From Macrostomum lignano (lineage: Eukaryota): DNA of 64,000 nt. The stretch's first letter is position 1; every line of letters starts with the position of its first letter. Shown piece by piece: positions 15,055 to 61,400 of this stretch. Under the pieces are notes generated by a model. The model saw only the letters and a program-made list of their open reading frames with translations, made no database searches and was not told where the DNA came from. Position numbers and translations under genes: made by a program. The stretch covers positions 372,001 to 436,000 of the forward strand of contig NIVC01000317.1 in assembly GCA_002269645.1 (NCBI GenBank), read 5' to 3'.

Positions 15055-16110
15055 TCGGCCCTAACCCTCAAATCCCTAACCCTGATATAAATCCCAACCC
15101 TTAGGACCTTAACCCTAACCCGTAAAATCATAACTTCAACCCTTAAAACGCTAACCCCAACTTTCAAAATCATTACTTTAACCCTTAAAACCCTAACCTC
15201 AACCCTTAAAACTCTAACCCGAACCCTCAAAACCCTAACTCCAACCCTTAAAACTCTAACCCGAACCCTTAAATTCTAACGCGAACCTTTTAAACCCAAA
15301 CTTCGACCCTTAAAACCCTAATTCCAACCCTTAAAACCCTAATTCCAACCCTTAAAACCCTAACCACAACCCTTAAAACCCCAACCTCAACCCTTAAAAC
15401 CCTAACCTCAACCCTTAAAACCCTATCCTCAACCCTGAAAACCCTAACCTCAACTCTTAAAGCCCTAACCTCAACCCTGAAAACCCTATCCTCAACTCTT
15501 AAAACCCTAGCCTCAACCCTTAGAATCCTAACCTCAACCCTGAAAACCCTAACCTCAATCCTTAAAACCCTAGCCTCAACCCTTAAAACCCTAAGCTCAA
15601 CCCTGAAAACCCTAAGCTCAACCCTGAAAACCCTAACCTCAACCTTGAAAACCCTAGCCTCAACCCTTAAAACCCTAACCTCAACCCTGAAAACCCTAAC
15701 CCCAACCCTGAAAACCCTAACCTCAACCCTGAAAACCCTAACCTCAACCCTGAAAACCCTAACCTCAACCCTGAAAATCCTAACCTCAACCCTGAAAACC
15801 CTATCCTCAAATCTTAAAACCCTAACCTCAACCCTGAAAACCCTAACCCCAACCCTGAAAACCCTAACCTCAACCCTGAAAACCCTAACCTCAACCCTGA
15901 AAACCCTAACCTCAATCCTTAAAACCCTAGCCTCAACCCTTAAAACCCTAAGCTCAACCCTGAAAACCCTAAGCTCAACCCTGAAAACCCTAACCTCAAC
16001 CTTGAAAACCCTAGCCTCAACCCTTAAAACCCTAACCTCAACCCTGAAAACCCTAACCCCAACCCTGAAAACCCTAACCTCAACCCTGAAAACCCTAACC
16101 TCAACCCTGA
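15055..16110. repeat. 21-bp telomere-like minisatellite (AACCCTGAAAACCCTAACCTC)n
   Basis: Tandem unit built from CCCTAA/CCCTGA/ACCTCA variants; more degenerate at the left end. Confidence 0.9.
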
Positions 16111-26340: not shown

Positions 26341-28708
26341 CTAGAGGATCCGGTATTTCTGCCCGCTGCTGCCGCTCCCGCTGAGCACCTTCTGCTGGCG
26401 GCTTCTCAGTTTAGCCAGAGCCATCGTGAGCAGCAGAACAAGCAACAGTACGATGCAGGCCATCGCGCACACAGCCGCCAACATCACCCAGTTGTACAGG
26501 GACAGCAGCAGCTCTTTGTCCGACTTGGCATGGCCGGCGCTACCGCAAGGCTGTCGGGTGGTTAATGGTGGCTTAAAAACTTTGGCTTCTGTTAGATAAG
26601 CTGCTTACAGATTATGGCTGCGATACAGGTAGGTGCAGCCATGCAGTACGTGTCTAACAGGTGGAACCATATTCCAGAGGGTGACACACACTGTCTAACA
26701 GGTGGAACCATATTCCAGAGGGTGACACACACTGTCTAACAGGTGAAACCATATTCCAGAGGGTGACACACACTGTCTAACAGGTGGAACCATATTCCAG
26801 AGGGTGACACACACTGTCTAACAGGTGGAACCATATTCCAGAGGGTGACACACACTGTCTAACAGGTGGAACCATATTCCAGAGGGTGACACACACTGTC
26901 TAACAGGTGGAACCATATTCCAGAGGGTGACACACACTGTCTAACAGGTGGAACCATATTCCAGAGGGTGACGCACTGTCTACTAAGTTGGAAATAACAG
27001 CAAATGGTTTAATTAACTGAAGCACTGAACAGCTGAACAGCCAATAATAGCTCGTAGCAACTGCAATACCAAACCAATTGCCCCAGTCAGCATCACCTGG
27101 TCGTGGATCACGGCCGCTTTAAACAGTCTGTGAAGTCCGACGAGGCCGATGCAAGCGATGCCGCCTCCCCGGTGATACTGCGTCTCTGCCCGGTTCATGT
27201 CGCCGATGCACGTGTGCGGCTTGGCATCAGTCTGGGCAGTCACGCACCACTTCGAATGGTCCTTTGTAGACTTAAACTGCGTCTGGTTCCCGATGCGAAC
27301 ATCGAGCACTTTGGTGACATTGTAGCGCCTGTTGCATGTCGAATTCAGCAGCTCTTTGCCGTGCTGCCAGGTTTCTACCTGCGTAAAACACAAAACGCAA
27401 AACTACCGATTACATGTAAAACAAAAAATTTACTAAAAATTTTGTAAAACTGCACTTCTTCTTTTGTAGAAGTATTGAAGTATAGAAGTATCTAAAAAAC
27501 ACATTTTTTTACAAATCAGTACAAAATATCTGATAATTCTGTACGTGCAGCCACGGAAGAATTAGGACACTATACAGTTGGTTTCTTAGAAATGAACCGG
27601 AAGGAACATATATTTGTAGTATCACTGGTGTATTTACTACTCTAGAGCTGAATGGGGTTTGGCCATAGACTAATTCAGTCGAGAAAAGTCCGCTTTTTCT
27701 ATAATAACATTCAAATGCGCTAGCGATCCTGCTAATCCGCTGGATTCCCTACCTGCCTTAAGATCATTTCTAAGAAAATCGAGTGCAACTGTCCTTTTAC
27801 TGCAATTTTCGATGCGTGCAACTCAGATCCGGAGTAAAGTGAGGTTTGGCCTTTATTTAATTTTCTATACATGTGAAACGCGAGATTCACGTCATTATAC
27901 AACGGGTCATTTCCAGTGATCCCACTGGATGTGATCCCACAGAAGCAATATACCTGAATGTTCGACTGAAGCTGACCAGCCAACAGGTAAGAATACAGGT
28001 CCTGCTTCAGGTGCGGAGACTTGGCCAGGTGCATCACGGACAGGCCACCGGAGGTCACCAGCTTGACAGTGGAATTCATCAAAGCCTTCGGTGGCTGCTT
28101 CCGTTTCTTCAGATCTGCCCAGCTGGGCCAGGCGGCCTCGGCGGCGGGGCTGACGCTGAGGCTGTAGAGGTCCGGGTGCGAGACGAACAGCTGGCTGCCG
28201 ATGATGTTGGCCATCTTTGCGCTGTCCACGGTCAGGCAAAGGAAGCTCTGGCCGTATTTCATCCCAGTGTCCGGGTACTCGTAGCGATGCAGGCTCATGT
28301 TCGGGAACTTTGGCACGCTGTGGATCAGCCAGAAGCCTTTCTGGCCAGACTTCAAAGCGACGAGCCCTTTCATGTGGCCGAACGCGCTGCTGCCGATGCT
28401 GCTGCTGTTGTTGTCCTCTGGCGGCTCGTCGTTGTACGCGGCCAGAACATCGGCGGCGGCATTGGAGCCGGCCTGCAGGACCTGGCTGACGGTGCTGAAC
28501 ACGGGCCATCCCGGGTGATGTCGCAGCCATCCGGCTGAATCCAGGCGGTTGACGAATTCGAGCTGACGTAGGCGTAGTGTCCGGAGTGCGGCTGCTTCAG
28601 CAGAGCGAACCAGTCCAGAGGAAAGCCATCGGCATCCAAGCACTGGAACTCGGCTGATGCAGCATGAACCAGCCAGGCTGATAGCGATAAAACAAATTTG
28701 TAGTTCAT
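26341..28708 (-). CDS. DNASE2: Deoxyribonuclease II family protein with signal peptide, C-terminal TM helix and YxxPhi tail (3 exons, ~415 aa; one 1-bp frameshift near 28503)
   Basis: Exons 28708-27954, 27378-27097, 26550-26341. Signal MNYKFVLSLSAWLVHAASA; DNase II motifs CLDADGFPLDWF, AYNDEPP, GHMKG, GFWLIHSVPKFP, YGQSFLC, HLAKS, ETWQ, KDHSKWC, CIGDMNR...RGGG..C, terminal PC. Exon 3 adds WVMLAAVCAMACIVLLLVLLLTMALA then KLRSRQQK...QKYRIL*. Exon 1 is 755 nt (3n+2); one extra C in a C3 run restores DGPVFST. Confidence 0.88.
26651..26980. repeat. 41-bp minisatellite, DNase II intron 2
   Basis: Tandem TGTCTAACAGGTGGAACCATATTCCAGAGGGTGACACACAC. Confidence 0.95.
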
Positions 28709-31690: not shown

Positions 31691-32393
31691 ATGTACAAGC
31701 TGCTTATGCTGACGCTGTTTCTGGCGTTGTGTCTCCAACCCGACATTCGCCCGGTCCTCGGCCGCAGCACCGGCCTAAGAGGAGCTCGAGAGGTGCGGCA
31801 GCGCTGGTCTGACACACCGTTTAAGGCGCTCATCCCGCCCGAGTACGATGCGAACGCCAGGGCCAAGTTCTGGCTGCTGTACCAGCGGCCCAGGTCAGGC
31901 TGTGGGGGTGTGGGGTCAGGAGTGAGGGGTGTGGGGTCAGGAGTGAGGGGTGTGGGGTCAGGAGTGAGGGGTGTGGGGTCAGGAGTGAGGGGTGTGGAGT
32001 CAGGAGTGAGGGGTGTGGAGTCAGGAGTGAGGGGTGTGGAGTCAGGAGTGAGGGGTGTGGAGTCAGGAGTGAGGGGTGTGGAGTCAGGAGTGAGGGGTGT
32101 GGAGTCAGGAGTGAGGGGTGTGGAGTCAGGAGTGAGGGATGTGGGGTCAGGAGTGAGGGGTGTGGAGTCAGGAGTGAGGGTTGTGGGTCAGGAGTGAAGG
32201 GTGTGGGATCAGGAGTGAGGGGTGTGGGATCAGGAGTGAGGGGTGTGGGATCAGGCATTGAAATTTATGTAGATCGTGAATTAATTGCGCACTACTCGTA
32301 GCTAAGCAACCATACAGCTCAAATGGGCATCAGTAAAATTTAAATATTTATTTACGAGTAAAATTGTCCACATATTTCAGGTTCGGCAGGTAG
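31691..32393 (+). CDS. NPY/NPF-like neuropeptide precursor 1 (71 aa, ends LYQRPRF-GR*)
   Basis: Exons 31691-31893 and 32381-32393. Signal MYKLLMLTLFLALCLQP; ...RQR-WSDTPFKALIPPEYDANARAKFWLLYQRP AG|gtcagg...tttcag|G TTC GGC AGG TAG gives R-F-G-R-stop. Phase-2 intron in the last Arg codon. Confidence 0.9.
31905..32255. repeat. 21-bp G-rich minisatellite in intron of precursor 1
   Basis: Tandem G(G/A)GTCAGGAGTGAGGGGTGTG. Confidence 0.95.
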
Positions 32394-32624
32394 TCAGTCG
32401 GACCCAACTGTGGATAGAGATTAAGAAGCCCAAGCGACTGAGCCCCGTGTCAGCGCCTTTCTTATTGAAAGAAAACCAACAAAGAAAAATTGATTAATAA
32501 ATCTCTAAAATTTCAAAGCTCAATTGGAATTCTAATTTGCAATCTCAAAACAGCGCGGATCGAAGTCTTTGTTTCCTTTGTTTAATTTCTGCCAGATTTC
32601 AAAGGCGAGGAACCCACACTTACC

Positions 32625-32885
32625 GCCATAGGAACCCACACTTACCGCCATAGGAACCCATACTTACCACCCTAGGAACCCACACTTACCACACTGGGAA
32701 CCCACACTTTGCACCCTAGGAACCCACACTTTGCACCCTAGGAACCCACACTTTGCACCCTAGGAACCCACACTTTGCACCCTAGGAACCCACACTTTGC
32801 ACCCTAAGAACCCACACTTACCACACTAGGAACCCACACTTACCACTCTAGGAACCCACACTTTGCACCCTAGGAACCCACACTA
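32625..32885. repeat. 22-bp minisatellite between the convergent neuropeptide genes
   Basis: Tandem GGAACCCACACTTTGCACCCTA variants. Confidence 0.9.
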
Positions 32886-33166
32886 CCGCCCCACAGAGTC
32901 CAAACTGCTGCCCCAGCAACCGCCCTACCAATGAGGCTTAACTCAGTTTCAATTCGGCATTCTGAGAACAATCAAATAAAAAAACAAATTTCATTAATCG
33001 TCGCACACAAGAGCTGATGAATTTGCCTAAATTATTGATTTTATTCGGGTCTGCGGCAGCTGTTTATTTCCAATAAATAGATGTTTTGAGTTAGTTACTC
33101 AGCTGACCTCGGTGAGTCATCGGATCGTGCCTGCGCTTCAGCTGGGGAACTCTGTTGAATAGGGAT

Positions 33167-33888
33167 TTATCGACCGAATCTACAATATAGGATGAATAGA
33201 TTTCTGTGACAGTGACAGTGAAAGTGACAGTGACATTAAAAGAGAAAGTGACAGTGACAGTGGTAGTGACAGTGATAGTAACAGGTACAGTTACAGTGAG
33301 AGTTACAGTGACAGTGACAGTGACAGTGACAGTGACAGTGACAGTGACAGTGACAGTAGCAGTGACAGTGACAGTAGCAGTGACAGTGACAGTGACAGTG
33401 ACAGTGACAGTGACAGTGACAGTGACAGTAGCAGTGACAGTGACAGTAGCAGTGACAGTGACAGTGACAGTGACAGTGACAGTGACAGTGACAGTGACAG
33501 TGACAGTGACAGTGACAGTGACAGTGACAGTGACAGTGACAGTGACAGTGAAAGTAACTGATAGTGACAGCGACATTAAAATGGAAAGTGACAGTGACAG
33601 CGCCGCAGACGCTCACCGAGGTCTCTGATACAGAATCCAGTGCTTCAGAATCTCCTTTACGGACTTCTTCTTCACGCTGAGGCGCCCGCCTCCCTGCAAC
33701 CACCGGCTGCTGCCAGCCGCCGAAGCCTCAGACGGAGCCTCGAACTCGCCAAAACTGATCTTGCCGGCCTCTTCCAAGTCAGCTGGTTGGGTCGACTCCA
33801 GGATGCTCCGACATTGAACGGCTCGACAGGTCAGGATGAGGAGGAGCAGCAGTGCCGCTGGCTGCTGGATCAGCTGATTGATCGGCAT
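33167..33888 (-). CDS. NPY/NPF-like neuropeptide precursor 2 (94 aa, ends LYQRPRF-GR*)
   Basis: Exons 33888-33617 and 33179-33167. Signal [26 protein letters not shown]; ...[33 protein letters not shown]|gtgagc...ttgtag|A TTC GGT CGA TAA gives R-F-G-R-stop. Intron contains (GTGACA)n. Confidence 0.9.
33206..33600. repeat. (GTGACA)n hexanucleotide microsatellite in intron of precursor 2
   Basis: Direct observation. Confidence 0.97.
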
Positions 33889-34084
33889 GTCCGAGCGGAT
33901 CCTGCAATAATCGGTCAGTGTTTTAGGCGTACAGCTGGTCGAATTCAAAGGGAATCACTTCACAAACTGAAAACTGGAACCTTTCACATTTCTTGTTGGC
34001 GAAAGTGGATACTAAAGCAGTTATCTACGAAGTGAAGTTTCTAGGTTTTAGAAGTGATTTGTTTTCTAGGAAAAGGCAATTGTA

Positions 34085-34750
34085 TAGTTCGTGAATTGTC
34101 TAGTTTGTGAACTGTCTAGTTTGTGAATTGTCTAGTTTGTGAATTGTCTAGTTTGTGAACTGTCTAGTTTGTGAATTATCTAGCTTGTGAACTGTCTAGT
34201 TTGTTAATTGTGTATTTTGTGAAGTGTCTAGTTTGTAAGTTTCTATTTTGTGAATTATATAGATTGTGAAGTGTTTAGTTTGTGAATTATATAGATTGTG
34301 AAGTGTCTAGTTTGTGAATTTTCTAGCTTGTGAATTGTCTAGTTTGTGAATTGTGTATTTTGTGAAGTGTCTAGTTTGTGAAGTGTTTAGTTTGTGAATT
34401 ATATAGATTGTGAAGTGTCTAGTTTGTGAATTTTCTAGCTTGTGAAGTGTCTAGTTTGTGAATTGTGTATTTTGTGAAGTGTCTAGTTTGTGAAGTGTTT
34501 AGTTTGTGAATTATATAGATTGTGAAGTGTCTAGTTTGTGAATTTTCTAGCTTGTGAAGTGTCTAGTTTGTGAATTTTCTAGCTTGTGAATTGTCTAGTT
34601 TGTGAATTGTGTATTTTGTGAAGTGTTTAGTTTGTGAATTATATAAGTTTGTGAAGTGTCTAATTTGGGAATTTTCTAGGTTGTTAATTGTATAGCTTGT
34701 GAATTGTCTAGTTTGTGAATTGTATCGTTGTGAAGAGTCTAGTTTGTGAA
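34085..34750. repeat. 16-bp minisatellite
   Basis: Tandem TTGTGAA(T/G)TGTCTAGT variants. Confidence 0.9.
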
Positions 34751-35199
34751 AAAGCTTGTAAAATTTTGTAAAACTTTACTCAGACTCACATAGACTTTCA
34801 ACTTCTTTAGATGATCAGATGTTGAGTTTCGTTCTAAAAGAATAATTATTGCGCTGCCGGTCCGGTCCGTCTTGAGTGCGCAACGAAAATAGCCGTCCGT
34901 TTCAAGAGTCCATTTATGACTGGGCCGCGAGCCCTTAGGCTCCAAAAACTGATCGCACCCCATTGGCTTTCAGACCGCCGGATCTTCAGCAAGTGTATAG
35001 GAACTCATGTGAGTTTATTTTTAAACTTTCAATAATTTTAACCCAGCCCGAACCATCCTGCCGGCCCTCCGACGGTACGTCTGACAGACGGTGGTAATTA
35101 GAAATGTGGACAAGGAGAACTGGATGTAATATCTGGACCGTGAATTGCAGAGAGATGGGGCACTGCGAGGTCCACGGGCGCTGGGCCATTAAATTATCG

Positions 35200-35720
35200 A
35201 TTGATTTCTTATCTTCTCTCATCCCTCCAATTATCGATAACGATCGATAATCGATTGACTTCTCATCTTCTCTCATCCCTCCAATTATCGATAACGATCG
35301 ATAATCGATTGACTTCTCATCTTCTCTCATCTCTCCAATTATCGATAACGATCGATAATCGATTGACTTCTCATCTTCTCTCATCTCTCCAATTATCGAT
35401 AACGATCGATAATCGATTGACTTCTCATCTTCTCTCATCTCTCCAATTATCGACAATGATCGAGATTATCGATTGACTTCTCATCTTCTCTCATCCCTCC
35501 AATTATCGTTTATCGATTGATTTCTCATCTTCTCTCATCCCTCCAATTATCGATTATCGATTGATTTCTCATCTTCTCTCATCCCCCAATTATAGATTAT
35601 TGATTAATTTCTCATCTTCTCTCATCCCTCAAATTATCGATAATGATCGATAATCGATTAATTTCTGATCTTCTCTCCTCCCTCTAGTTATCGATAAGGA
35701 TCAATTATTGATTGATTTCT
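35200..35720. repeat. ~51-bp minisatellite
   Basis: Tandem ...TTCTCATCTTCTCTCATC(C/T)CTCCAATTATCGATAACGATCGATAATCGATTGA; degenerates rightwards. Confidence 0.85.
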
Positions 35721-36369
35721 TATCTAAGATTCCTTTTGCCTTTCAAGGGTAATTTTCTAGATTTATTTATTTTCATTTGTCAGTTTTAACTTTACTATTT
35801 ACTATATTCAATTCTTATCAAAATCCTACGCCTAGCTGTAGATCCAACTCTCCTTGCACAGGTGGGGTGGGTAAGTTCTATTCAGCCATGCAGGAAGATC
35901 ATCAGTCATTCACCTGGCGCCTTGACCCGGAGCCCGGGTTTCATAATTCACTTGTGAGTTGCTTTTTTTAGCCTGCCGGTGCCACCCCACTCCCCGATTA
36001 TGGGGTGAATCTTGTCGCTGATGAGCACTTCATCTGGCGGGGAACCAGGCTATTGAGCTGGGGATGGGCTGCGGCACCTCTGATACGCCAGACTGATTGA
36101 TAGTGCAAAAGATATTGCCGATATTTCAATGGAGTGTGATCGGGGACATTGCGAGTGACTGGGGTGTGATCGGGGCCATTTTAACAGATTGGGGTGTGAT
36201 CCGGACAAATATTATAGAAATTTCTAGTGCAAAGGGCGTGGCTGCAAAAAGAATTTTTCTTGACGGTTTTGAATAGAAAATGCGCGCTTCAGATTTCCAA
36301 AGAAGTCTGCCAGCCAAATCCACTGCCAGTCGCGATAATAAGTCTCACCTTGACAGAACGCGTGAAAAC

Positions 36370-39372
<3,003 letters not shown>

Positions 39373-39669
39373 CATTGTCAAGAGACTCTGGATGCGGGAG
39401 CCGCATCTGGACGGGGACTGTATCCAGAAAATCAATTTGATTAGACTCTTTTTAGATTACCAAAGAGCAGCCCGCATTGTGCCTCTGACATTTTGACAAA
39501 GGAAACGATTTATGCTGGCAGTTTGAGGCTCTGAGTGATTACTTCTATCTCTTGTATTTCATAGACAAATGCCACCTGCTGAGGTGAATTCTGCTGCTAA
39601 TTCAGTGGCAATTCAAAGCGATCAGAAGTGTCTGCCATGTGCGCAATTTTGGAAACTGCCAACTTTGTC

Positions 39670-40010
39670 TGTCTGTAAGCGCTACATGCTGTAAACTGTA
39701 TCTGTCTGTAGGCACTGTGTGCTGTAAACTGTATTTGTCAGTAGGCACTGTATGCTGTAAACTGTATTTGACTGTAGGCACTGTGTGCTGTAAACTGTAT
39801 TTGTCTGTAGGCACTGTGTGCTGTAAACTGTATTTGTCTGTAGGCACTGTATGCTGTAAACTGTATCTGTCTGTAGGCACAGTGTGCTGTAAACTGTATT
39901 TGTCTGTAGGCACTGTATGCTGTAAACTGTATCTGTCTGTAGGCACAGTGTGCTGTAAACTGTATTTGTCTGTAGGCACAGTGTGCTGTAAACTGTATTT
40001 GTCTGTATCG
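39670..40010. repeat. 39-bp minisatellite
   Basis: Tandem GCTGTAAACTGTAT(T/C)TGTCTGTAGGCAC(T/A)GT(G/A)T. Confidence 0.93.
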
Positions 40011-40292
40011 TAGGCTGTACTGCATCAATATAGTTTAATAAATATTTTTTTCTATTTAAAGTAAAATTTCCAATTCACAGAAAACAACCCCACCTTTCAG
40101 ATGTCCACTGTAATTATATATGATCACTGTATGTACACTACTTATTAAACGTATACACACTGCATTGTCATTGTTTAGTGTCAGTCCAGCTCAGTAAAAC
40201 AAACGAAGGATTTGTTAATTCAAGTAATTTGTCCTGTTGCTCCATTATTTGCACAGCGCTAACTGTTTCTGAAGTCCGCGCTTCATTGCGCG

Positions 40293-41623
40293 TCAGCCCA
40301 TTCTGAAATTCAATGGTTCATTTATCATATTACTGCCAGTAGGGTGCAACAAATATGTTGAAAATAAGTTTTAAGCTCTACTATTGGAACCTGATTCGTT
40401 CTCGGAGAAATCTGTATCTTGCGTACGACTGCCTGAGCAACTCCATCAGCCGCTCAGCTTCTGACTGCCCTCTGCGACCGCGGCTAAACAGCTCGCTGAA
40501 ATGAAAAGGTGTGAGCAGGTCTCAGGTGTGAGAGTGAGCAGGTCTCAGGTGTGAGAGTGAGCAGGTCTCAGGTGTGAGAGTGAGCAGGTCTCAGGTGTGA
40601 GAGTGAGCAGGTCTCAGGTGTGAGAGTGAGCAGGTCTCAGGTGTGAGAGTGAGCAGGTCTCAGGTGTGAGAGTGAGCAGGTCTCAGGTGTGAGAGTGAGC
40701 AGGTCTCAGGTGTGAGAGTGAGCAGGTCTCAGGTGTGAGAGTGAGCAGGTCTCAGGTGTGAGAGTGAGCAGGTCTCAGGTGTGAGAGTGAGCAGGTCTCA
40801 GGTGTGAGAGTGAGCAGGTCTCAGGTGTGAGAGTGAGCAGGTATCAGGTGTGGGAGTGAGCAGGTCTCAGGTGTGAGAGTGAGCAGGTCTCAGGTGTGAG
40901 AGTGAGCAGGTCTCAGGTGTGAGAGTGAGCAGGTCTCAGGTGTGAGAGTGAGCAGGTCTCAGGTGTGAGAGTGAGCAGGTCTCAGGTATGAGAGTGAGCA
41001 GGTCTCAGGTGTGGGAGTGAGCAGGTATCAGGTGTGGGAGTGAGCAGGTCTCAGGTGTGAGAGTGAGCAGGTCTCAGGTGTGAGAGTGAGCAGGTCTCAG
41101 GTGTGAGAGTGAGCAGGTCTCAGGTGTGAGAGTGAGCAGGTCTCAGGTGTGAGAGTGAGCAGGTATCAGGTGTGAGAGTGAGCAGGTCTCAGATGTGAGA
41201 GTGAGCAGGTCTCAAGTGTGAGAGTGAGCAGGTATCAGGTGTGAGAGTGAGTAGGTCTCAGGTGTGAGAGTGAGCAGGTCTCAGGTGTGAGAGTGAGCAA
41301 GTCTCAAGTGTGAGAGTGAGCAGGTCTCAAGTGTGAGAGTGAGCAGGTCTCAAGTGTGAGAGTGAGCAGGTCTCAAGTGTCAGAGTGAGCACGCCTCAGG
41401 TTTGAGAGTTGGAGCGACTATTTTAGCACTGTTTGAATGAGCCATTAATTTACCCAGTTGCCATGGCAACGCCGCTGTCCCTGAGCGACATCGCACGAGC
41501 CATCCCAGCTGCCGGTTCCGCCCTGAACGCCAGCTGGGGTGCCGGCTGGCCCAGCAGCAGCAGCCACAGCAGCAGACGCAGCGGAAGCAGAGCCCCATTG
41601 AATCGGTGACCAGAGCGGGCCAT
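40293..41623 (-). CDS. NPY/NPF-related neuropeptide precursor 4 (94 aa, ends FLRERIRM-G*)
   Basis: Exons 41623-41454, 40495-40391, 40302-40293 (285 nt, phases 2 and 2). Hydrophobic leader MARSGHRFNGALLPLRLLLWLLLLGQPAPQLA; dibasic RR then GQSEAERLMELLRQSYARYRFLRERI AG|gttcca...tttcag|A ATG GGC TGA gives R-M-G-stop. Last donor is non-consensus beyond GT. Confidence 0.78.
40508..41385. repeat. 23-bp minisatellite in intron 1 of precursor 4
   Basis: Tandem GTGAGCAGGTCTCAGGTGTGAGA. Confidence 0.97.
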
Positions 41624-41927
41624 GCTGGAACTGAAGCAGATTCGGGTTTTGTTATTCGGGTTGCATGTAATTTCAGTTTTACAGTCTTTGCTTATGAAAT
41701 GAAAATTAAAACACTTAAATTTGCTTTTTTGAAGCAAGTGTAGCTGTGAGATCAGCAGTGTCCTCTTGTTTTATATTTTCATTAATTCATCAGCAGCGTT
41801 CTACCACATCGAGTTTGTTGCAATTTGGGATTTCTGTAATAGCAGGAAGTTGCAATCAGTGGTCGATCTCGAGTACAAAGGCTTCCCTGGCTGCACTGGG
41901 TTCCTTCCGGCTTGCTTGGCTCCATCT

Positions 41928-43178
41928 TCAGCCCATGCTGCAATGAGGATCAGGGATATTGATTGACAACTGTGACCCCCGACTTTCCTGTTGGCTTGTC
42001 CGGTTTAATCATCACCTGTTTACTGTGTGAGCACTTTCCTGTCTGCAGTGTAAACACCCTCTGTCTACAGTGTAAACACCCCTGTCTACAGTGTAAACAT
42101 CCCTGTCTACAGTGTAAACACCCTGTCTACAGTGTAAACACCCCTGTCTACAGTGTAAACATCCCTGTCTACAGTGTAAACACCCCCTGTCTACAGTGTA
42201 AACACCCCTGTCTACAGTTTAAACACCCCTGTCTACAGTTTAAACACCTTTATCTACAGTGTAAACATCCCTGTCTACAGTGTAAACACCCCTGTCTACA
42301 GTTTAAACACCCTCTGTCTACAGTGTAAACACCCCTGTCTACAGTGTAAACACCCCCTGTCTACAGTGTAAACACCCCTGTCTACAGTTTAAACACCCCT
42401 GTCTACAGTTTAAACACCTTTGTCTACAGTGTAAACATCCCTGTCTACAGTGTAAACATCCCTGTCTACAGTGTAAACACCCCCTGTCTACAGTGTAAAC
42501 ACCCCTGTCTACAGTTTAAACACCTCTGTCTACAGTGTAAACGCCCCTGTCTACAGTGTAAACACCTCATGTTTACAGTTTAAACACTCCTGTTTAAAGT
42601 GTAAACACCGCAGCGGCTCTCACCGAATCCGCTGGGTCAAGAAGTCATTCTTGGCTTTGAAGTCGGCCAGCTTGGCCAGCAGACGGGCCGCATTGAAGTC
42701 ATTCGAGCCGCTGCGCTTCCATTCGGCCACGCTGTTTTTATTTTAAAATACATAAACTCTCATTAGACTACTATAACTGAGTAGTGCAAAACAAATTACG
42801 CTCTTAAACATCAGTTTCTAAAAGACAAAAAATGAAACTGAAAACTCAAACTGAAACAAAACCCCATGATTTCTATAATTTGAAGGTTTTGGGCAGCCCC
42901 AGTCGCTAGGCATCATGAAATGGGCTGGCTCAGAAGTACTAAAAATGACCAAAAATCGCTGAACCCCGCCTCAAAGGCCGAAGACAGAGCAGGACTCACT
43001 TGAAATTCGCCTGCTCGGCGGGATGGTAGGAGCCGTTGGGCACCGCCAGGTCGGCCTCGGAAGGCGCATAGCGATAGGCCGCGTCGCGAGGCCGCGAGGG
43101 CGCCGCCTGAGCCAGCTGGAGGCTCAGCAGCAGCAGCAGCACCAGCGGCGCAGCTTTGCAGGTTCCTTTGACGGGCAT
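41928..43178 (-). CDS. NPY/NPF-related neuropeptide precursor 3 (98 aa, ends FLTQRIRM-G*)
   Basis: Exons 43178-43000, 42731-42624, 41937-41928 (297 nt, phases 2 and 2). Signal MPVKGTCKAAPLVLLLLLSLQLAQA; KR then SGSNDFNAARLLAKLADFKAKNDFLTQRI CG|gtgaga...cattgcag|C ATG GGC TGA gives R-M-G-stop. Probable 5' UTR intron from donor 44389 (aag|gtaagg) to acceptor 43208. Confidence 0.85.
42045..42610. repeat. ~21-bp minisatellite in intron 2 of precursor 3
   Basis: Tandem ACAGTGTAAACACCCCTGTCT variants. Confidence 0.93.
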
Positions 43179-43329
43179 CTTGTTGCTTTTTTAGTTTCTT
43201 GACTTGTCTGCGAAATAGACCAGTTTGTGCAGGGGCTTCAACTCCACTGGGTGGGCCTTCTGAGGGACAAGAGAGGGAGGGACAAGAGACCAGGACAAGG
43301 ACAAGGACAAGGACAAGGGACAAGAGGAG

Positions 43330-44240
43330 GGACTCCCTCTCTTGTCCCTCCCTCTCTTGTCCCTCACTCTCTTGTCCTCCTCTCTTGTCCCTCCCTCTCT
43401 TGTCCCTCACTCTCTTGTCCCTCCCTCTCTTGTCCCTCCCTCTCTTGTCCCTCCTCTCTTGTCCCTCCCTCTCTTGTCCCTCCCTCTCTTGTCCCTCCCT
43501 CTCTTGTCCCTCCCTCTCTTGTCCCTCTCTCTTGTCCCTCCCTCTCTTGTCCCTCTCTCTTGTCCCTCCCTCTCTTGTCCCTCCCTCTCTTGTCCCTCCC
43601 TCTCTTGTCCCTCTCTCTTGTCCCTCCCTCTCTTGTCCCTCACTCTCTTGTCCCTCCCTCTCTTGTCCCTCCTCTCTTGTCCCTCCTCTCTTGTCCCTCC
43701 CTCTCTTGTCCCTCCCTCTCTTGTCCCTCCCTCTCTTGTCCCTCCCTCTCTTGTCCCTCCCTCTCTTGTCCCTCCCTCTCTTGTCCCTCCCTCTCTTGTC
43801 CCTCCCTCTCTTGTCCCTCTCTCTTGTCCCTCCCTCTCTTGTCCCTCCCTCTCTTGTCCCTCCCTCTCTTGTCCCTCCCTCTCTTGTCCCTCACTCTCTT
43901 GTCCCTCCCTCTCTTGTCCCTCCCTCTCTTGTCCCTCCTCTCTTGTCCCTCCCTCTCTTGTCCCTCCCTCTCTTGTCCCTCCCTCTCTTGTCCCTCCCTC
44001 TCTTGTCCCTCCCTCTCTTGTCCCTCTCTCTTGTCCCTCCCTCTCTTGTCCCTCTCTCTTGTCCCTCCCTCTCTTGTCCCTCCCTCTCTTGTCCCTCCCT
44101 CTCTTGTCCCTCTCTCTTGTCCCTCACTCTCTTGTCCCTCACTCTCTTGTCCCTCCCTCTCTTGTCCCTCCCTCTCTTGTCCCTCCTCTCTTGTCCCTCC
44201 CTCTCTTGTCCCTCCCTCTCTTGTCCCTCCCTCTCTTGTC
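43330..44240. repeat. ~15-bp pyrimidine-rich minisatellite
   Basis: Tandem CTCTTGTCCCTCCCT variants; source of several spurious ORFs. Confidence 0.95.
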
Positions 44241-44529
44241 CGACTGAGAGATGGAGCTCAGTCGGACCTTCTGAGCTAAGCTTCGGTAGCAAACGAATTA
44301 ATCTTCAGATCCAGTTTCTTAGCGCCGCATGGCTTGCCCGCAGAGGTTCCCATTATGTTATTCTACTGAAAATGTTCGGCCAGCCTTACCTTTAAGCTGA
44401 TATGCAGAAGGTTCTGTTTCAACAGAGAATTTGAGTTTTTTCTTGTCTGAAAAACTGTTGAAGGCGAAGACAGATCTCGGAGTTGGGCGAGAATTTATCC
44501 AGAAACGAGTGGAGAATCTGGGAGCGGCT

Positions 44530-44545
44530 CAGTTGGCCAATCACA
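44530..44545. promoter_or_regulatory. Possible CCAAT box upstream of precursor 3
   Basis: TTGGCCAATCA about 150 bp upstream (minus sense) of the putative UTR-exon donor at 44389; function inferred only. Confidence 0.3.
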
Positions 44546-44644
44546 GATCAGAGACCAAATAAGACTCTGGCTTTCGGGTGATGATGATTTTGTTTCTGAC
44601 TGAGGAACGAAGACTGAGAAGGAGAAAGAGGGGGGAGAGGGGGA

Positions 44645-45030
44645 GCGAGAGGGAGAGCGAGAGAGAGAGAGCGAGAGAGAGAGAGCGAGAGAGAGAGAGC
44701 GAGAGAGAGAGAGAGCGAGAGAGAGAGCGAGAGAGAGAGCAAGAGAGAGAGAGAGAGCGAGAGAGAGAGAGAGAGCGAGAGAGAGAGCGAGAGAGAGAGC
44801 GAGAGAGAGCGCGAGAGAGAGCGAGAGAAAGAGAGCGAGAGAGAGAGCGAGAGAGAGAGCGAGAGAGAGAGCGAGAGAGAGAGCGAGAGAAAGAGAGCGA
44901 GAGAGAGAGCGAGAGAGAGAGCGAGAGAGAGAGCGAGAGAGAGAGCGAGAGAGAGAGCGAGAGAGAGAGCGAGAAGGAGAGAGAACGCGAGAGAGTGGGG
45001 GAAAGAGAGAGAGAGCGAGAGCGAGAGAAG
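44645..45030. repeat. (GA)n / (GAGAGAGAGAGC)n microsatellite
   Basis: Direct observation. Confidence 0.95.
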
Positions 45031-45599
45031 TCACTGCGTGTCGAGTTATTGTAATTATTTGTCGACCGGTTTCAACCCCCGAGGCTCTTCGTCAAGTCAG
45101 AAGAGGGAAGAGATCCCTTCCCAATCAGTTTGGGTGATGACAGGAGCTCCACGCGAGTCGCACAGCGGTTGTCAAACTCCGACAGCATCCGGCACAGCAC
45201 CGACCTCAGCCGGTCTCGGTTTGTCAGCTTAATTGGGCTTAGGAAAGAGTAGAAGAAAGGAAAATACAAGACAGACAGACGGACAGAGAAGGGTACAGAG
45301 AAGTGCAGAGCTTCATTTTATGTTTTTCTGTTTTGTCTGAACGGAGAATCGAAAGATGAAAACAAAATAATTCGAGGCCTTTCATTCCGCGTGGCTTGCA
45401 AAGAGTGACAAGATAATCTGTGATTGTGATTTAGGTCTCAAGTTCAGTGACTTTAATCTAGCGGGGGGCGGGTGACCCCTGATGCACCTGCTTTTGTTGA
45501 CGTCTTTCACTGTGTTGATTCAGCGTGGGCGGCTGAGGCCGAGTCAGTTTCTGTTTAGGAAAATTAGGGCTCATTTTCAGGTCGACTCACCCAATTGAC

Positions 45600-46130
45600 T
45601 CATCCAATCGGTGAGTCGACAAGTTGGTGATTCGACCGTCGATGCTAAGTTGGTGAATCGGTGCGTCGATAAGTTAGTGAATCGACAAGTCGATGCTAAG
45701 TTGGTGAATCGGTGAGTCGATAAGTTGGTGAATCGGTGAGTCAGTGAAGAGTTGGTGAATCGGTGAGTCAGTGATGAGTTGGTGAATCGGTGAGTCAGTG
45801 ATGAGTTGGTGAATCGGTGAGTCAGTGAAGAGTTAGTTAATCGGTGAGTCAGTGAAGAGTTGGTGAATCGGTGAGTCAGTGATGAGTTGGTGAGTCGGTG
45901 AGTCAGTGAAGAGTTGGTGAATCGGAGAGTCAGTGATGAGTTGGTGAATCGGTGAGTCAGTGATGAGTTGGTGAATCGGTGAGTCAGTGAAGAGTTAGTG
46001 AATCGGTGAGTCAGTGAAGAGTTGGTGAATCGGAGAGTCGATAAGTTGGTGAATCGGTGAGTCAGTGATGAGTTGGTGAGTCGGTGAGTCAGTGAAGAGT
46101 TGGTGAATCGGAGAGTCGATACTGAATTAG
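45600..46130. repeat. 27-bp minisatellite
   Basis: Tandem GAGTCAGTGA(A/T)GAGTTGGTGAATCGGT. Confidence 0.92.
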
Positions 46131-46569
46131 TGAAAGCAATGGGATCCATTATTTGAAATCCAGCAGTCAGGGAGAGATGCCCCGTCTGTAATCTTGAATT
46201 TTAGATTTTCCAGAATCCAAAATTGAGCACATCAGTGAAATGCAAATCACTGGAATTGAAAATTCCGATTCGAACCCGCGTCCCTCAGCCAGCATGTTCG
46301 GCTGGTGGGAGTCAGGGCTTGCATCCGAAATTAGGAGAGGGGGGTTAACGGACCAGACCGAGTTCACGCGTGCCGCCGCATCTTAAGAGACTCCGTCGTG
46401 TCTCATCGAATATTCCCCCCCCCCTGCCGATTTAATATTCGATTTACCTTTGTTCCCAAAATTGGGATCTTGTCGGGACTTGAATCTCCAATTGCTTGCG
46501 GGAGAGATGCGACTGGAATTAATGCGGGGAGGAATTGCTGTTCGGTTTCACAGGGCTCACTGAGACTCA

Positions 46570-47229
46570 TTGAGTGAGTGAATGAGTGAGTGAGTGAGTG
46601 AGTGAGTGAGTGAGTGTGTGAGTGAGTGAGTGTCTGAGTGAGTGAGTGAGTGAGTGAGTGAGTGAGTGAGTGAGTGAGTGAGTGAGTGAGTGAGTGAGTG
46701 AGTGAGTGAGTGAGTGAGTGAGTGAGTGAGTGAGTGAGTGAGTGAGTGAGTGAGTGAGTGAGTGAGTGAGTGAGTGAGTGAGTGAGTGAGTGAGTGAGTG
46801 AGTGAGTGAGTGAGTGAGTGAGTGAGTGAGTGAGTGAGTGAGTGAGTGAGTGAGTGAGTGAGTGAGTGAGTGAGTGAGTGAGTGAGTGAGTGAGTGAGTG
46901 AGTGAGTGAGTGAGTGAGTGAGTGAGTGAGTGAGTGAGTGAGTGAGTGAGTGAGTGAGTGAGTGAGTGAGTGAGTGAGTGAGTGAGTGAGTGAGTGAGTG
47001 AGTGAGTGAGTGAGTGAGTGAGTGAGTGAGTGAGTGAGTGAGTGAGTGAGTGAGTGAGTGAGTGAGTGAGTGAGTGAGTGAGTGAGTGAGTGAGTGAGTG
47101 AGTGAGTGAGTGAGTGAGTGAGTGAGTGAGTGAGTGAGTGAGTGAGTGAGTGAGTGAGTGAGTGAGTGAGTGAGTGAGTGAGTGAGTGAGTGAGTGAGTG
47201 AGTGAGTGAGTGAGTGAGTGAGTGAGTGA
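46570..47229. repeat. (GAGT)n microsatellite
   Basis: Direct observation. Confidence 0.98.
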
Positions 47230-48552: not shown

Positions 48553-58408
<9,856 letters not shown>

Positions 58409-58499: not shown

Positions 58500-61400
58500 T
58501 CCTGACTCTTCGTGACTTTTCCTGACTCTTCCTGACTCTTCCTGACTCTTCCTGACTCTTCCTGACTCTTCCTGACTCTTCCTGACTCTTCCAGTCTCTT
58601 CCTGACTCTTCCTGACTCTTCCTGACTCTTCCTGACTCTTCCAGTCTCTTCCTGACTCTTCCAGTCTCTTCCTGACTCTTCCAGTCTCTTTCTGACTCTT
58701 CCAGTCTCTTCCTGACTCTTCCTGACTCTTCCTGACTCTTCCTGACTCTTCCTGACTCTTCCAGTCTCTTCCTGACTCTTCCAGTCTCTTCCTGACTCTT
58801 CCAGTCTCTTTCTGACTCTTTCAGTCTCTTCCTGACTCTTCCTGACTCTTCCTGACTCTTCCAGTCTCTTCCTGACTCTTCCTGACTCTTCCTGACTCTT
58901 CCTGACTCTTCCAGTCTCTTCCTGACTCTTCCTGACTCTTCCTGAATCTTCCTGACTCTTCCTGACTCCTCCTGACTCTTCCTGACTCCTCCTGACTCTT
59001 CCTGACTCTTCCTGACTCTTCCTGACTCTTCCTGACTCTTCCTGACTCTTCCAGTCTCTTCCAGTCTCTTCCTGACTCTTCCTGACTCTTCCAGTCTCTT
59101 CCTGACTCTTCCTGACTCTTCCAGTCTCTTCCTGACTCTTCCTGACTCTTCCTGAATCTTCCTGACTCTTCCTGACTCTTCCTGACTCTTCCTGACTCTT
59201 CCTGACTCTTCCTGACTCTTCCAGTCTCTTCCTGACTCTTCCTGACTCTTCCAGTCTCCTCCTGACTCTTCCTGACTCTTCCTGACTCTTCCTGACTCTT
59301 CTCTGACTCTTCCTGGCTCTTCCTGACTCTTCCTGACTCTTCCTGACTCTTCCTGACTCCTCCTGACTCTTCCTGACTCTTCCTGACTCTTCCTGACTCC
59401 TCCTGACTCTTCCTGACTCCTCCTGACTCTTCCTGACTCTTCCTGACTCTTCCTGACTCTTCCTGACTCTTCCTGACTCTTCCAGTCTCTTCCAGTCTCT
59501 TCCTGACTCTTCCTGACTCTTCCAGTCTCTTCCTGACTCTTCCTGACTCTTCCTGAATCTTCCTGACTCTTCCTGACTCTTCCTGACTCTTCCTGACTCT
59601 TCCTGACTCTTCCTGACTCTTCCAGTCTCTTCCTGACTCTTCCTGACTCTTCCAGTCTCCTCCTGACTCTTCCTGACTCTTCCTGACTCTTCCTGACTCT
59701 TCTCTGACTCTTCCTGGCTCTTCCTGACTCTTCCTGACTCTTCCTGACTCTTCCTGACTCCTCCTGACTCTTCCTGACTCTTCCTGACTCTTCTCTGACT
59801 CTTCCTGACTCTTCCTGACTCTTCCAGTCTCCTCCTGACTCTTCCTGACTCTTCCTGACTCTTCCTGACTCTTCTCTGACTCTTCCTGACTCTTTCTGAC
59901 TCTTCTCTGACTCTTCCTGACTCTTCCTGACTCTTCCTGACTCTTCCTGACTCCTCCTGACTCTTCCTGACTCTTCCTGACTCTTCTCTGACTCTACATG
60001 ACTCTTCCTGACTCTTCCAGTCTCCTCCTGACTCTTCCTGACTCTTCCTGACTCTTCCTGACTCTTCTCTGACTCTTCCTGACTCTTCCTGACTCTTCTC
60101 TGACTCTTCCTGACTCTTCCTGACTCTTCCTGACTCTTCCAGTCTCTTCCTGACTCTTCCTGACTCTTCCTGACTCTTCCTGACTCTTCCAGTCTCTTCC
60201 TGACTCTTCCAGTCTCTTCCTGACTCTTCCAGTCTCTTCCTGACTCTTCCAGTCTCTTTCTGACTCTTCCAGTCTCTTCCTGACTCTTCCTGACTCTTCC
60301 TGACTCTTCCTGACTCTTCCTGACTCTTCCAGTCTCTTCCTGACTCTTCCAGTCTCTTCCTGACTCTTCCAGTCTCTTTCTGACTCTTTCAGTCTCTTCC
60401 TGACTCTTCCTGACTCTTCCTGACTCTTCCTGACTCTTCCTGACTCTTCCTGACTCTTCCTGACTCTTCCTGACTCTTCCAGTCTCTTCCTGACTCTTCC
60501 AGTCTCTTCCTGACTCTTCCAGTCTCTTTCTGACTCTTCCTGACTCTTCCAGTCTCTTCCTGACTCTTCCTGACTCTTCCAGTCTCTTCCTGACTCTTCC
60601 TGACTCTTCCTGAATCTTCCTGACTCTTCCTGACTCTTCCTGACTCTTCCTGACTCTTCCTGACTCTTCCTGACTCTTCCAGTCTCTTCCTGACTCTTCC
60701 TGACTCTTCCAGTCTCCTCCTGACTCTTCCTGACTCTTCCTGACTCTTCCTGACTCTTCTCTGACTCTTCCTGGCTCTTCCTGACTCTTCCTGACTCTTC
60801 CTGACTCTTCCTGACTCCTCCTGACTCTTCCTGACTCTTCCTGACTCTTCCTGACTCCTCCTGACTCTTCCTGACTCCTCCTGACTCTTCCTGACTCTTC
60901 CTGACTCTTCCTGACTCTTCCAGTCTCTTCCTGACTCTTCCTGACTCTTCCTGACTCTTCCAGTCTCTTCCTGACTCTTCCTGACTCTTCCTGACTCTTC
61001 CAGTCTCTTCCTGACTCTTCCTGACTCTTCCTGACTCTTCCTGACTCTTCCTGACTCTACCTGACTCTTCCTGACTCTACCTGACTCTTCCTGACTCTTC
61101 CTGACTCTTCCTGACTCCTCCTGACTCTTCCTGACTCTTCCTGACTCTTCTCTGACTCTACATGACTCTTCCTGACTCTTCCAGTCTCCTCCTGACTCTT
61201 CCTGACTCTTCTCTGACTCTTCCTGACTCTTCTCTGACTCTTCCTGACTCTTCCAGTCTCTTCCTGACTCTTCCTGACTCTTCCTGACTCCTCCTGACTC
61301 TTCCTGACTCTTCCTGACTCTTCCTGACTCTTCCTGACTCTTCCTGACTCTTCCAGTCTCCTCCTGACTCTTCCTGACTGTTCGTGACTCTTCCTGACTC

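What the first reader, a model, noticed from the sequence alone, without database searches (positions are those of the whole stretch)
40293..43178. Two tandem precursors predicted to yield RIRM-amide (Met-amide) peptides
Genes 3 and 4 independently splice onto an N-ATG-GGC-TGA micro-exon. Predicted peptides are SGSNDFNAARLLAKLADFKAKNDFLTQRIRM-NH2 (31 aa, after KR) and GQSEAERLMELLRQSYARYRFLRERIRM-NH2 (28 aa, after RR). They share only FL-x-x-RIRM, the 3-exon phase-2/phase-2 structure and orientation, which suggests selection on the C-terminus after an old duplication. Canonical NPY/F end RxRF/RxRY-amide with G-K/R; a Met-amide with Gly directly before the stop is unusual, and I do not recognise it from a described family.
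Basis: partly seen in the sequence, partly recalled or inferred. Interest (0 to 1): 0.8.

Follow-up and report, generated by a model that had tools for sequence, protein, structure and literature searches.

The report
Flatworm NPF-like genes ending Met-amide
Two neighbouring genes of the flatworm Macrostomum lignano, plus a third copy elsewhere in its genome, are divergent members of the neuropeptide Y/F family. Their predicted hormone ends in Arg-x-Arg-Met-amide instead of the usual Phe or Tyr, which is an unusual but not unprecedented variant that nobody appears to have described.

Summary
On the minus strand at 43178..41928 (G3) and 41623..40293 (G4) lie two 3-exon genes. Each has a phase-2 intron inside the penultimate Arg codon, then a terminal exon whose coding part is N-ATG-GGC-TGA. 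The products end ..FLTQRIRMG* and ..FLRERIRMG*.

- **Organism:** Macrostomum lignano.
- **G3:** my 98-aa product is identical to GenBank PAA94096.1 (BOX15_Mlig030474g1). That annotation is built from RNA-seq transcripts, so the RIR|MG* junction has transcript support.
- **G4:** it is in no protein database, and I could not verify its expression.
- **A third paralogue (G5, BOX15_Mlig025860g3):** it ends ..FLTQRVRMG* and has the same intron and the same A-ATG-GGC-TGA exon. Against G3, the peptide after KR is 77% identical and the rest of the precursor 32%, with dN 0.14 and dS 0.95. That indicates purifying selection on the peptide.
- **Canonical neighbours:** two NPF genes ending RPRF-GR* lie 8 kb away in the same window.

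The genes are therefore a lineage-specific RxRM-amide branch of the NPY/NPF superfamily. Both "odd" features have planarian precedents: Smed-NPY-11 ends RPRL-amide, and Smed-NPY-7 ends Gly-stop. Processing, amidation and the receptor are inferred, not shown. I rate this a new variant of a known kind, of moderate interest.

The parts
43000..43178 (-). G3 exon 1. It holds the ATG (43178), the signal peptide MPVKGTCKAAPLVLLLLLSLQLAQA and the N-terminal propeptide, and ends TTCAA|gtgagt (phase 2).
   Evidence: The spliced product is identical to GenBank PAA94096.1.
42624..42731 (-). G3 exon 2, encoding ..VAEW-KR-SGSNDFNAARLLAKLADFKAKNDFLTQRI plus the first two bases (CG) of the last Arg codon. The predicted mature peptide starts at 42712.
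   Evidence: The donor is CG|gtgaga.
41938..42623 (-). G3 intron 2 (686 nt, phase 2, inside the Arg codon). Most of it is a 21-bp minisatellite (42038-42609).
41928..41937 (-). Coding start of the G3 terminal exon: ttgcag|C ATG GGC TGA. It completes Arg and adds Met, Gly and stop. The 3'UTR continues downstream.
   Evidence: P0002 reads through this junction into the 3'UTR.
41631..41632 (-). AG of the acceptor ctgcttcag|TTCCAGC, 7 nt upstream of the G4 ATG. It is a candidate spliced-leader trans-splice site. Several WormBase ParaSite/UniProt models use it as a cis acceptor to fuse G3 exon 2 to G4 in frame.
   Evidence: The motif [T/C]TNCAG comes from PMC8629364. Inference only.
41454..41623 (-). 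G4 exon 1. It holds the ATG (41623), the signal-like segment ALLPLRLLLWLLLLG and propeptide, and ends ACTGG|gtaaat (phase 2).
   Evidence: Models P0004 and P0010 contain this exon and stop at its end.
40496..41453 (-). G4 intron 1 (958 nt), almost entirely a 23-bp minisatellite of 39 copies.
40391..40495 (-). G4 exon 2, encoding ELFSRG-RR-GQSEAERLMELLRQSYARYRFLRERI plus AG of the last Arg codon. The predicted mature peptide starts at 40470.
   Evidence: AlphaFold2 predicts a helix over residues 8-33 of this exon with pLDDT above 90.
40293..40302 (-). Coding start of the G4 terminal exon, after an 88-nt phase-2 intron: atttcag|A ATG GGC TGA.
   Evidence: Its flanks match the G5 terminal exon (ATTTCAGAATGGGCTGAYGCGCA).
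31691..32393 (+). G1, a canonical NPF gene. Exon 1 is 31691-31893 (..AKFWLLYQRP AG|gt) and the terminal coding part is 32381-32393 (G TTC GGC AGG TAG), giving ..YQRPRF-GR*.
33167..33888 (-). G2, a canonical NPF gene convergent with G1. Exon 1 is 33888-33617 (..[11 protein letters not shown]|gt) and the terminal coding part is 33179-33167 (A TTC GGT CGA TAA), giving ..YQRPRF-GR*.

Best explanation
G3 and G4 are tandem, same-strand members of a Macrostomum lignano-specific branch of the NPY/NPF prohormone gene family. A third member, G5, lies on another scaffold.

**Proposed mechanism**
1. Each gene encodes a signal peptide, a poorly conserved propeptide, a dibasic site (KR or RR) and one helical peptide of 28-31 aa.
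2. As in all NPY/NPF genes, a phase-2 intron splits the codon of the Arg that precedes the amidated residue.
3. The last exon supplies the third base of that codon, then Met, Gly and stop.
4. After signal-peptide removal and prohormone-convertase cleavage, the C-terminal Gly is already exposed, so no carboxypeptidase step is needed.
5. Peptidylglycine alpha-amidating enzymes would convert the Gly to an amide, giving ..RIRM-NH2 (G3, G4) and ..RVRM-NH2 (G5).
6. The retained Arg-x-Arg-x-amide suggests an NPY/NPF-type or derived GPCR. The Pro-to-Ile/Val and Phe-to-Met changes suggest altered receptor selectivity compared with the RPRF-amide peptides encoded 8 kb away.

**Shown versus inferred**
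- Shown: gene structures, the transcript-based model of G3 and G5, the existence of the paralogues, and purifying selection on the mature peptide.
- Inferred: cleavage sites, amidation, secretion, the receptor, and expression of G4.
For: **Structure**
- All five genes have the intron between bases 2 and 3 of the Arg codon. This is the feature reported as conserved in NPY/NPF genes across phyla (PMC7314547; PMC2953531).

**Transcript support**
- G3 is identical to PAA94096.1 and G5 to BOX15_Mlig025860g3. Both come from a GenBank annotation built only from StringTie/TACO/TransDecoder transcripts.

**Conservation**
- Three paralogues keep ATG GGC TGA.
- G3 against G5: the mature peptide is 23/30 identical and signal plus propeptide 32%. 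dN is 0.14 and dS 0.95.
- G3-G4, G4-G5 and G3-G5 are each significant in pairwise BLASTP.
- In a second genomic copy (L001), G3 differs only synonymously. G4 differs only in the signal and propeptide regions.

**Linkage**
- Canonical RPRF-GR* genes G1 and G2 lie in the same 12-kb cluster.
- The C-terminal 14 aa of G1 and G3 share 7 identities, AK..xL.QR.R.G (E = 0.11, only suggestive).

**Fold**
- A helix is predicted through to the C-terminus in both peptides.

**Precedents**
- Smed-NPY-11 is RPRL-amide with the same intron, and Smed-NPY-7 ends RPRYG-stop.
- RMamide and RLamide variants occur in nematode RFamide families.
Against: - By sequence alone G3, G4 and G5 are not recognisable NPY/NPF peptides. 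Pfam gives no hit, although the canonical G1 and G2 get none either.
- A profile of nine planarian NPY peptides scores G1 and G2 above all 1000 shuffles. It does not do so for G3 (97/1000), G4 (523/1000) or G5 (39/1000).
- The defining aromatic C-terminal residue and the Pro of RPR are absent. The predicted mature peptides contain no proline at all.
- The helical hydrophobic moment is not above shuffled controls.
- G4 has no annotated protein anywhere, so its transcription is unverified.
- No peptide, amidation or receptor data exist.
- No orthologue outside M. lignano was found. This may only reflect what the databases hold.
Confidence: 0.75

Rival explanations
1. The genes belong to a different amidated-peptide family and only resemble NPF by convergence. 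Candidates are the flatworm/spiralian myomodulin-like 'RL/RMamide' peptides, or a CRH/DH44-like helical peptide.
For: - There is no significant sequence match to NPY profiles.
- Planarians do have an RL/RMamide prohormone class, spp-4 and spp-5.
- Spiralian myomodulins usually end in RLamide or RMamide (PMC8557429).
Against: - G3, G4 and G5 each encode a single long peptide at the C-terminal end of a small precursor. I did not read the spp-4/spp-5 precursor sequences; from general knowledge myomodulin-type precursors carry many short copies.
- The phase-2 intron sits exactly in the penultimate Arg codon, as in NPY/NPF genes.
- The genes sit next to two canonical RPRF genes with the same intron.
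- RxR spacing is retained.
Confidence: 0.08
2. G3 and G4 are decaying or neutral NPF duplicates. On this view the Phe-to-Met change and loss of the basic residue after Gly are degenerative, and no bioactive peptide is made.
For: - The canonical Phe/Tyr and Pro are lost.
- G4 is unannotated.
- The region is saturated with minisatellites.
Against: - All three paralogues and the extra genomic copy have intact ORFs, splice sites and Met-Gly-stop.
- dN/dS is about 0.15 on the mature peptide across a duplication with dS near 1.
- G3 and G5 are transcribed.
Confidence: 0.05
3. G3 and G4 are not independent genes but one transcription unit. Either G4 is matured by spliced-leader trans-splicing (an operon), or G3 exon 2 is cis-spliced in frame to the acceptor 7 nt before the G4 ATG. 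The second route would give a fusion precursor (..RIR-SS-MARSG..) in which the G3 peptide is not amidated. This is compatible with the main explanation for the products of normal splicing.
For: - UniProt models P0005, P0006 and P0010 make exactly this in-frame join, and P0004 joins G3 exon 1 to the same acceptor.
- The acceptor CTTCAG fits the trans-splice motif [T/C]TNCAG.
- The gap of about 300 bp between the G3 stop and this acceptor is under the 1-kb operon criterion.
- About 7% of M. lignano transcripts are polycistronic precursors.
Against: - The fused models are from an older assembly. Whether RNA supports them I could not tell; the frameshifts and scrambled stretches in P0002, P0004, P0005 and P0006 suggest the underlying sequence or models are poor.
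- The RNA-seq-based GenBank model ends G3 at its own terminal exon.
- An in-frame join has a 1-in-3 chance of arising by accident.
- No reads were examined here.
Confidence: 0.12

Closest known systems
Schmidtea mediterranea NPY-11, the 'atypical neuropeptide Y' (Collins et al. 2010, PMC2953531)
   Same: A flatworm NPY-superfamily prohormone whose amidated C-terminal residue is aliphatic rather than aromatic (..SRPRL-amide). It has the family intron in the Arg codon and a single long peptide.
   Different: NPY-11 keeps RPR and a GKR site plus a C-terminal extension, ends in Leu rather than Met, and its peptide directly follows the signal peptide. No sequence similarity to G3-G5 beyond RxRxG was detected. 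Orthology is not shown.
Canonical flatworm NPF: Moniezia expansa NPF, Smed-NPY-1 to -8, and G1/G2 in this window
   Same: - The phase-2 intron in the penultimate Arg codon.
- Signal peptide plus one peptide.
- Arg-x-Arg-x-Gly terminus.
- Very short or absent C-terminal extension. G1 and G2 end GR-stop, and Smed-NPY-7 ends G-stop.
- Physical clustering with G1 and G2.
   Different: - RIRM/RVRM instead of (G/Q)RPRF/Y.
- An extra phase-2 intron upstream of the dibasic site, shared by G3, G4 and G5 but absent from G1 and G2.
- An N-terminal propeptide removed at KR or RR.
- No prolines in the mature peptide.
Vertebrate NPY/PYY/PP
   Same: The position and phase of the intron in the Arg35 codon, C-terminal amidation from Gly, and a helical C-terminal half with Arg33 and Arg35 equivalents.
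   Different: No PP-fold polyproline segment, no Tyr-amide, no CPON-like C-terminal peptide, and no detectable sequence homology.
RL/RMamide (myomodulin-like) peptides of spiralians and RMamide variants of nematode FLPs
   Same: A C-terminal Arg-Met-amide replaces Arg-Phe-amide within families related to RFamides.
   Different: From general knowledge, those are short peptides present in several copies per precursor; I did not check their gene structures here.

Membership tests
NPY/NPF superfamily | [quoted passage not shown] | tested here: met
   G3 has CG|gt..ag|C, G4 has AG|gt..ag|A and G5 has CG|gt..ag|A. G1 and G2 have the same arrangement.
NPY/NPF superfamily | A C-terminal Arg-x-Arg-Phe/Tyr followed by a Gly amidation donor | tested here: not met
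   Arg-x-Arg and Gly are present, but the last residue is Met in all three paralogues (RIRMG*, RIRMG*, RVRMG*). No alternative exon giving Phe or Tyr lies within 5 kb.
NPY/NPF superfamily | A small precursor with an N-terminal signal peptide and a single long (about 30-40 aa) peptide | tested here: met
   The precursors are 94-104 aa with hydrophobic N-termini and one 28-31 aa peptide after KR or RR. The signal peptide was judged by eye; no predictor was available.
NPY/NPF superfamily | Detectable sequence similarity to family members or profiles | tested here: not met
   Pfam gives no hit at E <= 1, though G1 and G2 also fail. The planarian NPY profile gives G3 97/1000, G4 523/1000 and G5 39/1000 shuffles at or above the observed score, against 0/1000 for G1 and G2. 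G1 against G3 at the C-terminus has E = 0.11.
NPY/NPF superfamily | PP-fold: an N-terminal polyproline segment packed on a C-terminal amphipathic helix | tested here: inconclusive
   A helix is predicted to the C-terminus (G3 residues 57-97, pLDDT 77-84 over 70-90; G4 exon 2 residues 8-33, pLDDT above 90). The mature peptides have no Pro, and the hydrophobic moment is not above shuffles. These are single-sequence models.
NPY/NPF superfamily | Activates an NPY/NPF-type rhodopsin-beta GPCR | not testable with these tools
   No receptor gene lies in the window, and this needs a cell-based assay.
NPY/NPF superfamily | Common descent with canonical NPF genes (supporting evidence, not a defining feature): tandem clustering | tested here: met
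   G1, G2, G3 and G4 lie within window 31691-43178.
Myomodulin-like RL/RMamide prohormones | Several copies of short RL/RM-amide peptides flanked by dibasic sites in one precursor | tested here: not met
   Each of G3, G4 and G5 has a single copy at the extreme C-terminus and no internal G-K/R repeats.

The most novel reading that the evidence does not exclude
The RxRM-amide peptides form a separate, macrostomid-specific ligand-receptor system that split from NPF signalling, with a receptor pocket re-tuned from an aromatic to a Met amide. In addition, G3 and G4 may be co-expressed from one transcription unit resolved by spliced-leader trans-splicing. That would be a neuropeptide 'operon' whose alternative cis-splice switches the upstream peptide between an amidated and a non-amidated, fused form.
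Probability: 0.15. Interest if true: 0.65.

Novelty: new variant of a known kind. Interest (0 to 1): 0.45.

Why it matters
The C-terminal aromatic amide (Phe or Tyr) is the most conserved contact of NPY/NPF peptides with their receptors. Here a family branch has swapped it for Met and the preceding Pro for Ile or Val, kept the change under purifying selection in three paralogues, and still sits beside canonical RPRF genes. That makes it a natural experiment in ligand-receptor co-evolution.

M. lignano is transgenic and RNAi-tractable, so the question can be tested directly. It also shows that motif-based neuropeptide mining with RxRF/Y-G-K/R patterns misses real family members. G1, G2 and G4 are absent from public protein sets, and G3 and G5 are labelled only 'hypothetical' or 'secreted protein'.

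The result is not a new kind of system. Planarian NPY-11 (RPRL-amide) already shows that flatworm NPY genes can lose the aromatic terminus.

Tried and rejected
- **Alternative terminal exons.** I scanned 5 kb downstream of each donor for AG|N-xxx-GGN. Only the minisatellite-derived RQG.., RVGS* and similar chance hits appeared, with no RF-G or RY-G. A looser scan found a second G4 acceptor at 40334, but it is in frame with the same Met-Gly-stop.\n- **Intron retention.** It would give RIR* for G3 and RIRFQ* for G4, with no Gly in either. I rejected this as the main product because G3 is annotated as spliced.\n- **Homologues outside M. lignano.** A word-indexed search with G3, with G4 and with a 3-sequence profile, plus full HMMER against 1.84 billion representatives, returned only M. 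lignano proteins. I folded only its exon 2 instead.
Full report
**What is there**

The window is eukaryotic DNA packed with mini- and microsatellites.

| Gene | Exon 1 | Exon 2 | Terminal coding part | Product |
|---|---|---|---|---|
| G3 | 43178-43000 | 42731-42624 | 41937-41928 | 98 aa: MPVKGTCKAAPLVLLLLLSLQLAQA-APSRPRDAAYRYAPSEADLAVPNGSYHPAEQANFNVAEW-KR-SGSNDFNAARLLAKLADFKAKNDFLTQRIRM-G-stop |
| G4 | 41623-41454 | 40495-40391 | 40302-40293 | 94 aa: ..ELFSRG-RR-GQSEAERLMELLRQSYARYRFLRERIRM-G-stop |

All four introns are phase 2. The last intron of each gene sits between the second and third base of the Arg codon that precedes Met. The string AG-N-ATG-GGC-TGA occurs exactly twice in the window, at these two places, against 0.04 expected by chance. 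No acceptor giving R-F-G or R-Y-G lies within 5 kb of either donor. The one other plausible acceptor for G4 is in the same frame and also ends FRMG-stop. The only correction is that the 'micro-exon' is the 10-nt coding start of a normal terminal exon.

**Context in the window**

The same scan found two more genes of the family.
- G1 (plus strand, 31691-32393) ends ..AKFWLLYQRPRF-GR-stop.
- G2 (minus strand, 33888-33167) ends ..[13 protein letters not shown]-stop.
- Each has the same phase-2 intron in the Arg codon and a 13-nt terminal coding segment (N-TTC-GGN-MGN-stop).

Four NPF-type genes therefore lie within 12 kb: two canonical RPRF-amide genes and two RIRM genes.

**Organism and transcript support**

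The G3 product is 100% identical over its full length to GenBank PAA94096.1, 'hypothetical protein BOX15_Mlig030474g1' of Macrostomum lignano. That annotation was built only from RNA-seq-derived transcripts using StringTie, TACO, TBONE and TransDecoder (Wudarski et al. 2017, PMC5730564). The exon 2|exon 3 junction giving RIR|MG-stop therefore has transcript-level support.

Independent UniProt models agree. P0003 ends ..FLTQRIRMG. P0002 is a frameshifted reading of the same spliced junction that runs into the 3'UTR (..PADSHGLKMEPSK corresponds to GATTCG|CATGGGCTGAAGATGG).

G4 is different. No full-length protein exists in the databases searched, and the GenBank locus lists no gene over it. Its expression is unverified.

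**A second copy and a third paralogue**

Locus L001 (NIVC01000016.1) is a second copy of the region, about 94-98% identical over the stretches BLAST aligned. There G3 differs by two synonymous changes only. G4 differs by three amino-acid changes, all in the signal or propeptide, with the mature peptide and terminal exon unchanged. There are too few differences to test selection.

The full HMMER search was more informative. It found a diverged paralogue, G5 (UniProt A0A1I8I379 and A0A1I8F280; GenBank BOX15_Mlig025860g3). G5 ends ..KR-GGSFDAAKVLAKLAELKAKNDFLTQRVRM-G-stop.

Its locus (L002) has the same design. There is an upstream phase-2 intron, then ..CGC GTC CG|gtgcgt, a (GATA)n-filled intron, and catttcag|A ATG GGC TGA. 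The terminal-exon flanks resemble those of G4.

Between G3 and G5 the mature peptide is 23/30 identical, and signal plus propeptide 32%. Over the mature region dN is 0.14 and dS is 0.95. This is the signature of purifying selection on exactly the segment that starts after KR and ends Met-Gly-stop. It supports both the predicted cleavage site and the functional importance of the terminus. G3-G4 and G4-G5 are also significantly similar in pairwise comparisons (E about 1e-5 to 1e-4).

**What family**

The intron between bases 2 and 3 of the Arg codon before the amidated residue is the documented hallmark of NPY/NPF genes from vertebrates to flatworms, molluscs, arthropods and nematodes (PMC7314547; PMC2953531). 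G1 to G5 all have it. Taken with the precursor layout, the Arg-x-Arg-x-Gly terminus and the physical clustering with canonical NPF genes, I place G3-G5 in the NPY/NPF superfamily as a derived branch.

That branch is marked by Pro-to-Ile/Val, Phe-to-Met, Gly-stop and an extra upstream phase-2 intron shared by all three members.

The limits of this placement should be stated plainly.
- Sequence alone does not show membership. Pfam finds nothing, including for G1 and G2.
- A profile of nine planarian NPY peptides recognises G1 and G2 but not G3-G5.
- The mature peptides lack proline.
- Their helices are confidently predicted but are not demonstrably amphipathic.

**Comparison with what is known**

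- Smed-NPY-11 is called 'atypical'. It ends RPRL-amide and has the family intron.
- The Smed-NPY-7 prohormone ends RPRYG with no basic residues (Collins et al. 2010).
- RMamide and RLamide also replace RFamide in some nematode FLPs and in spiralian myomodulins.
- A C-terminal Gly needs no carboxypeptidase trimming before amidation. This rests on established biochemistry of peptidylglycine amidation, not on a test here.

I found no paper that lists RIRM/RVRM-amide peptides or an M. lignano NPF repertoire. The library does not hold every subscription-journal paper on flatworm neuropeptides.

**Mechanism proposed**

Signal peptidase acts first, followed by prohormone convertase cleavage at KR or RR. 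The exposed Met-Gly is then amidated directly. The product is a 28-31 aa cationic helical peptide ending RxRM-NH2, acting on an NPY/NPF-type or derived GPCR with selectivity different from the neighbouring RPRF-amide peptides. Only the gene structures, transcription of G3 and G5, and selection on the peptide are shown. Everything downstream is inference.

**Side observation on transcription**

G4 starts about 300 bp after the G3 stop. An acceptor, ctgcttcag|TTCCAGC, lies 7 nt before its ATG and fits the M. lignano SL trans-splice motif. The spacing meets the published operon criterion (PMC8629364). Several older gene models splice G3 exon 2, or exon 1, to this acceptor, in frame in the exon 2 case (..RIR-SS-MARSG..). 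This may reflect a polycistronic unit or simply prediction artefacts. I could not examine reads.

**Verdict**

The finding is real and correctly read. It is a new variant of a known kind rather than a new family, and its interest is moderate.

Noticed in passing
window 31691-32393 (+) and 33167-33888 (-): Two convergent, canonical NPF genes (..YQRPRF-GR*) with the family intron. Their exact products are absent from the 15-billion-protein collection, so they appear to be unannotated.
   Followed up: partly
window 41624-41632 (-): The acceptor cttcag|TTCCAGC just upstream of the G4 ATG fits the SL trans-splice motif. The G3-G4 spacing of about 300 bp suggests a two-gene operon. UniProt models P0004, P0005, P0006 and P0010 use it as a cis acceptor, creating G3-G4 fusions.
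   Followed up: partly
window 31894-32380, 33180-33616, 41938-42623, 40496-41453; L002 13193-13656: All five NPF-family genes (G1-G5) have an intron largely filled by a tandem repeat, and the repeat is different in each: a 21-mer, GTGACA, another 21-mer, a 23-mer, and GATA. The exons stay intact.
   Followed up: no
window 40303-40390 (-): If the 88-nt last intron of G4 were retained, the reading frame would give ..RERIRFQ-stop. That is an RF terminus without Gly, and is probably coincidental.
   Followed up: no
window 36372-39370; 58500-63994; 15093-16112: Very long simple arrays: (ATAG) about 750 copies, a 10-mer TCCTGACTCT about 546 copies, and a 21/42-bp array containing CCCTAA telomere-like units.
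   Followed up: no
window 50-2753; 27732-28643 (-); 49816-50505 (-): ORFs with endonuclease/reverse-transcriptase domains (a LINE-like element), a DNase II domain (E = 8e-41) and a GDNF/GAS1 domain (E = 2.5e-7).
   Followed up: no
L001 (NIVC01000016.1) versus window 40293-47000: The GenBank locus carrying the identical G3 protein is not the window itself. It is a copy about 94-98% identical over the aligned stretches, with different minisatellite copy numbers, which would fit the duplicated genome described for M. lignano (titles and abstracts listed; not read).
   Followed up: partly
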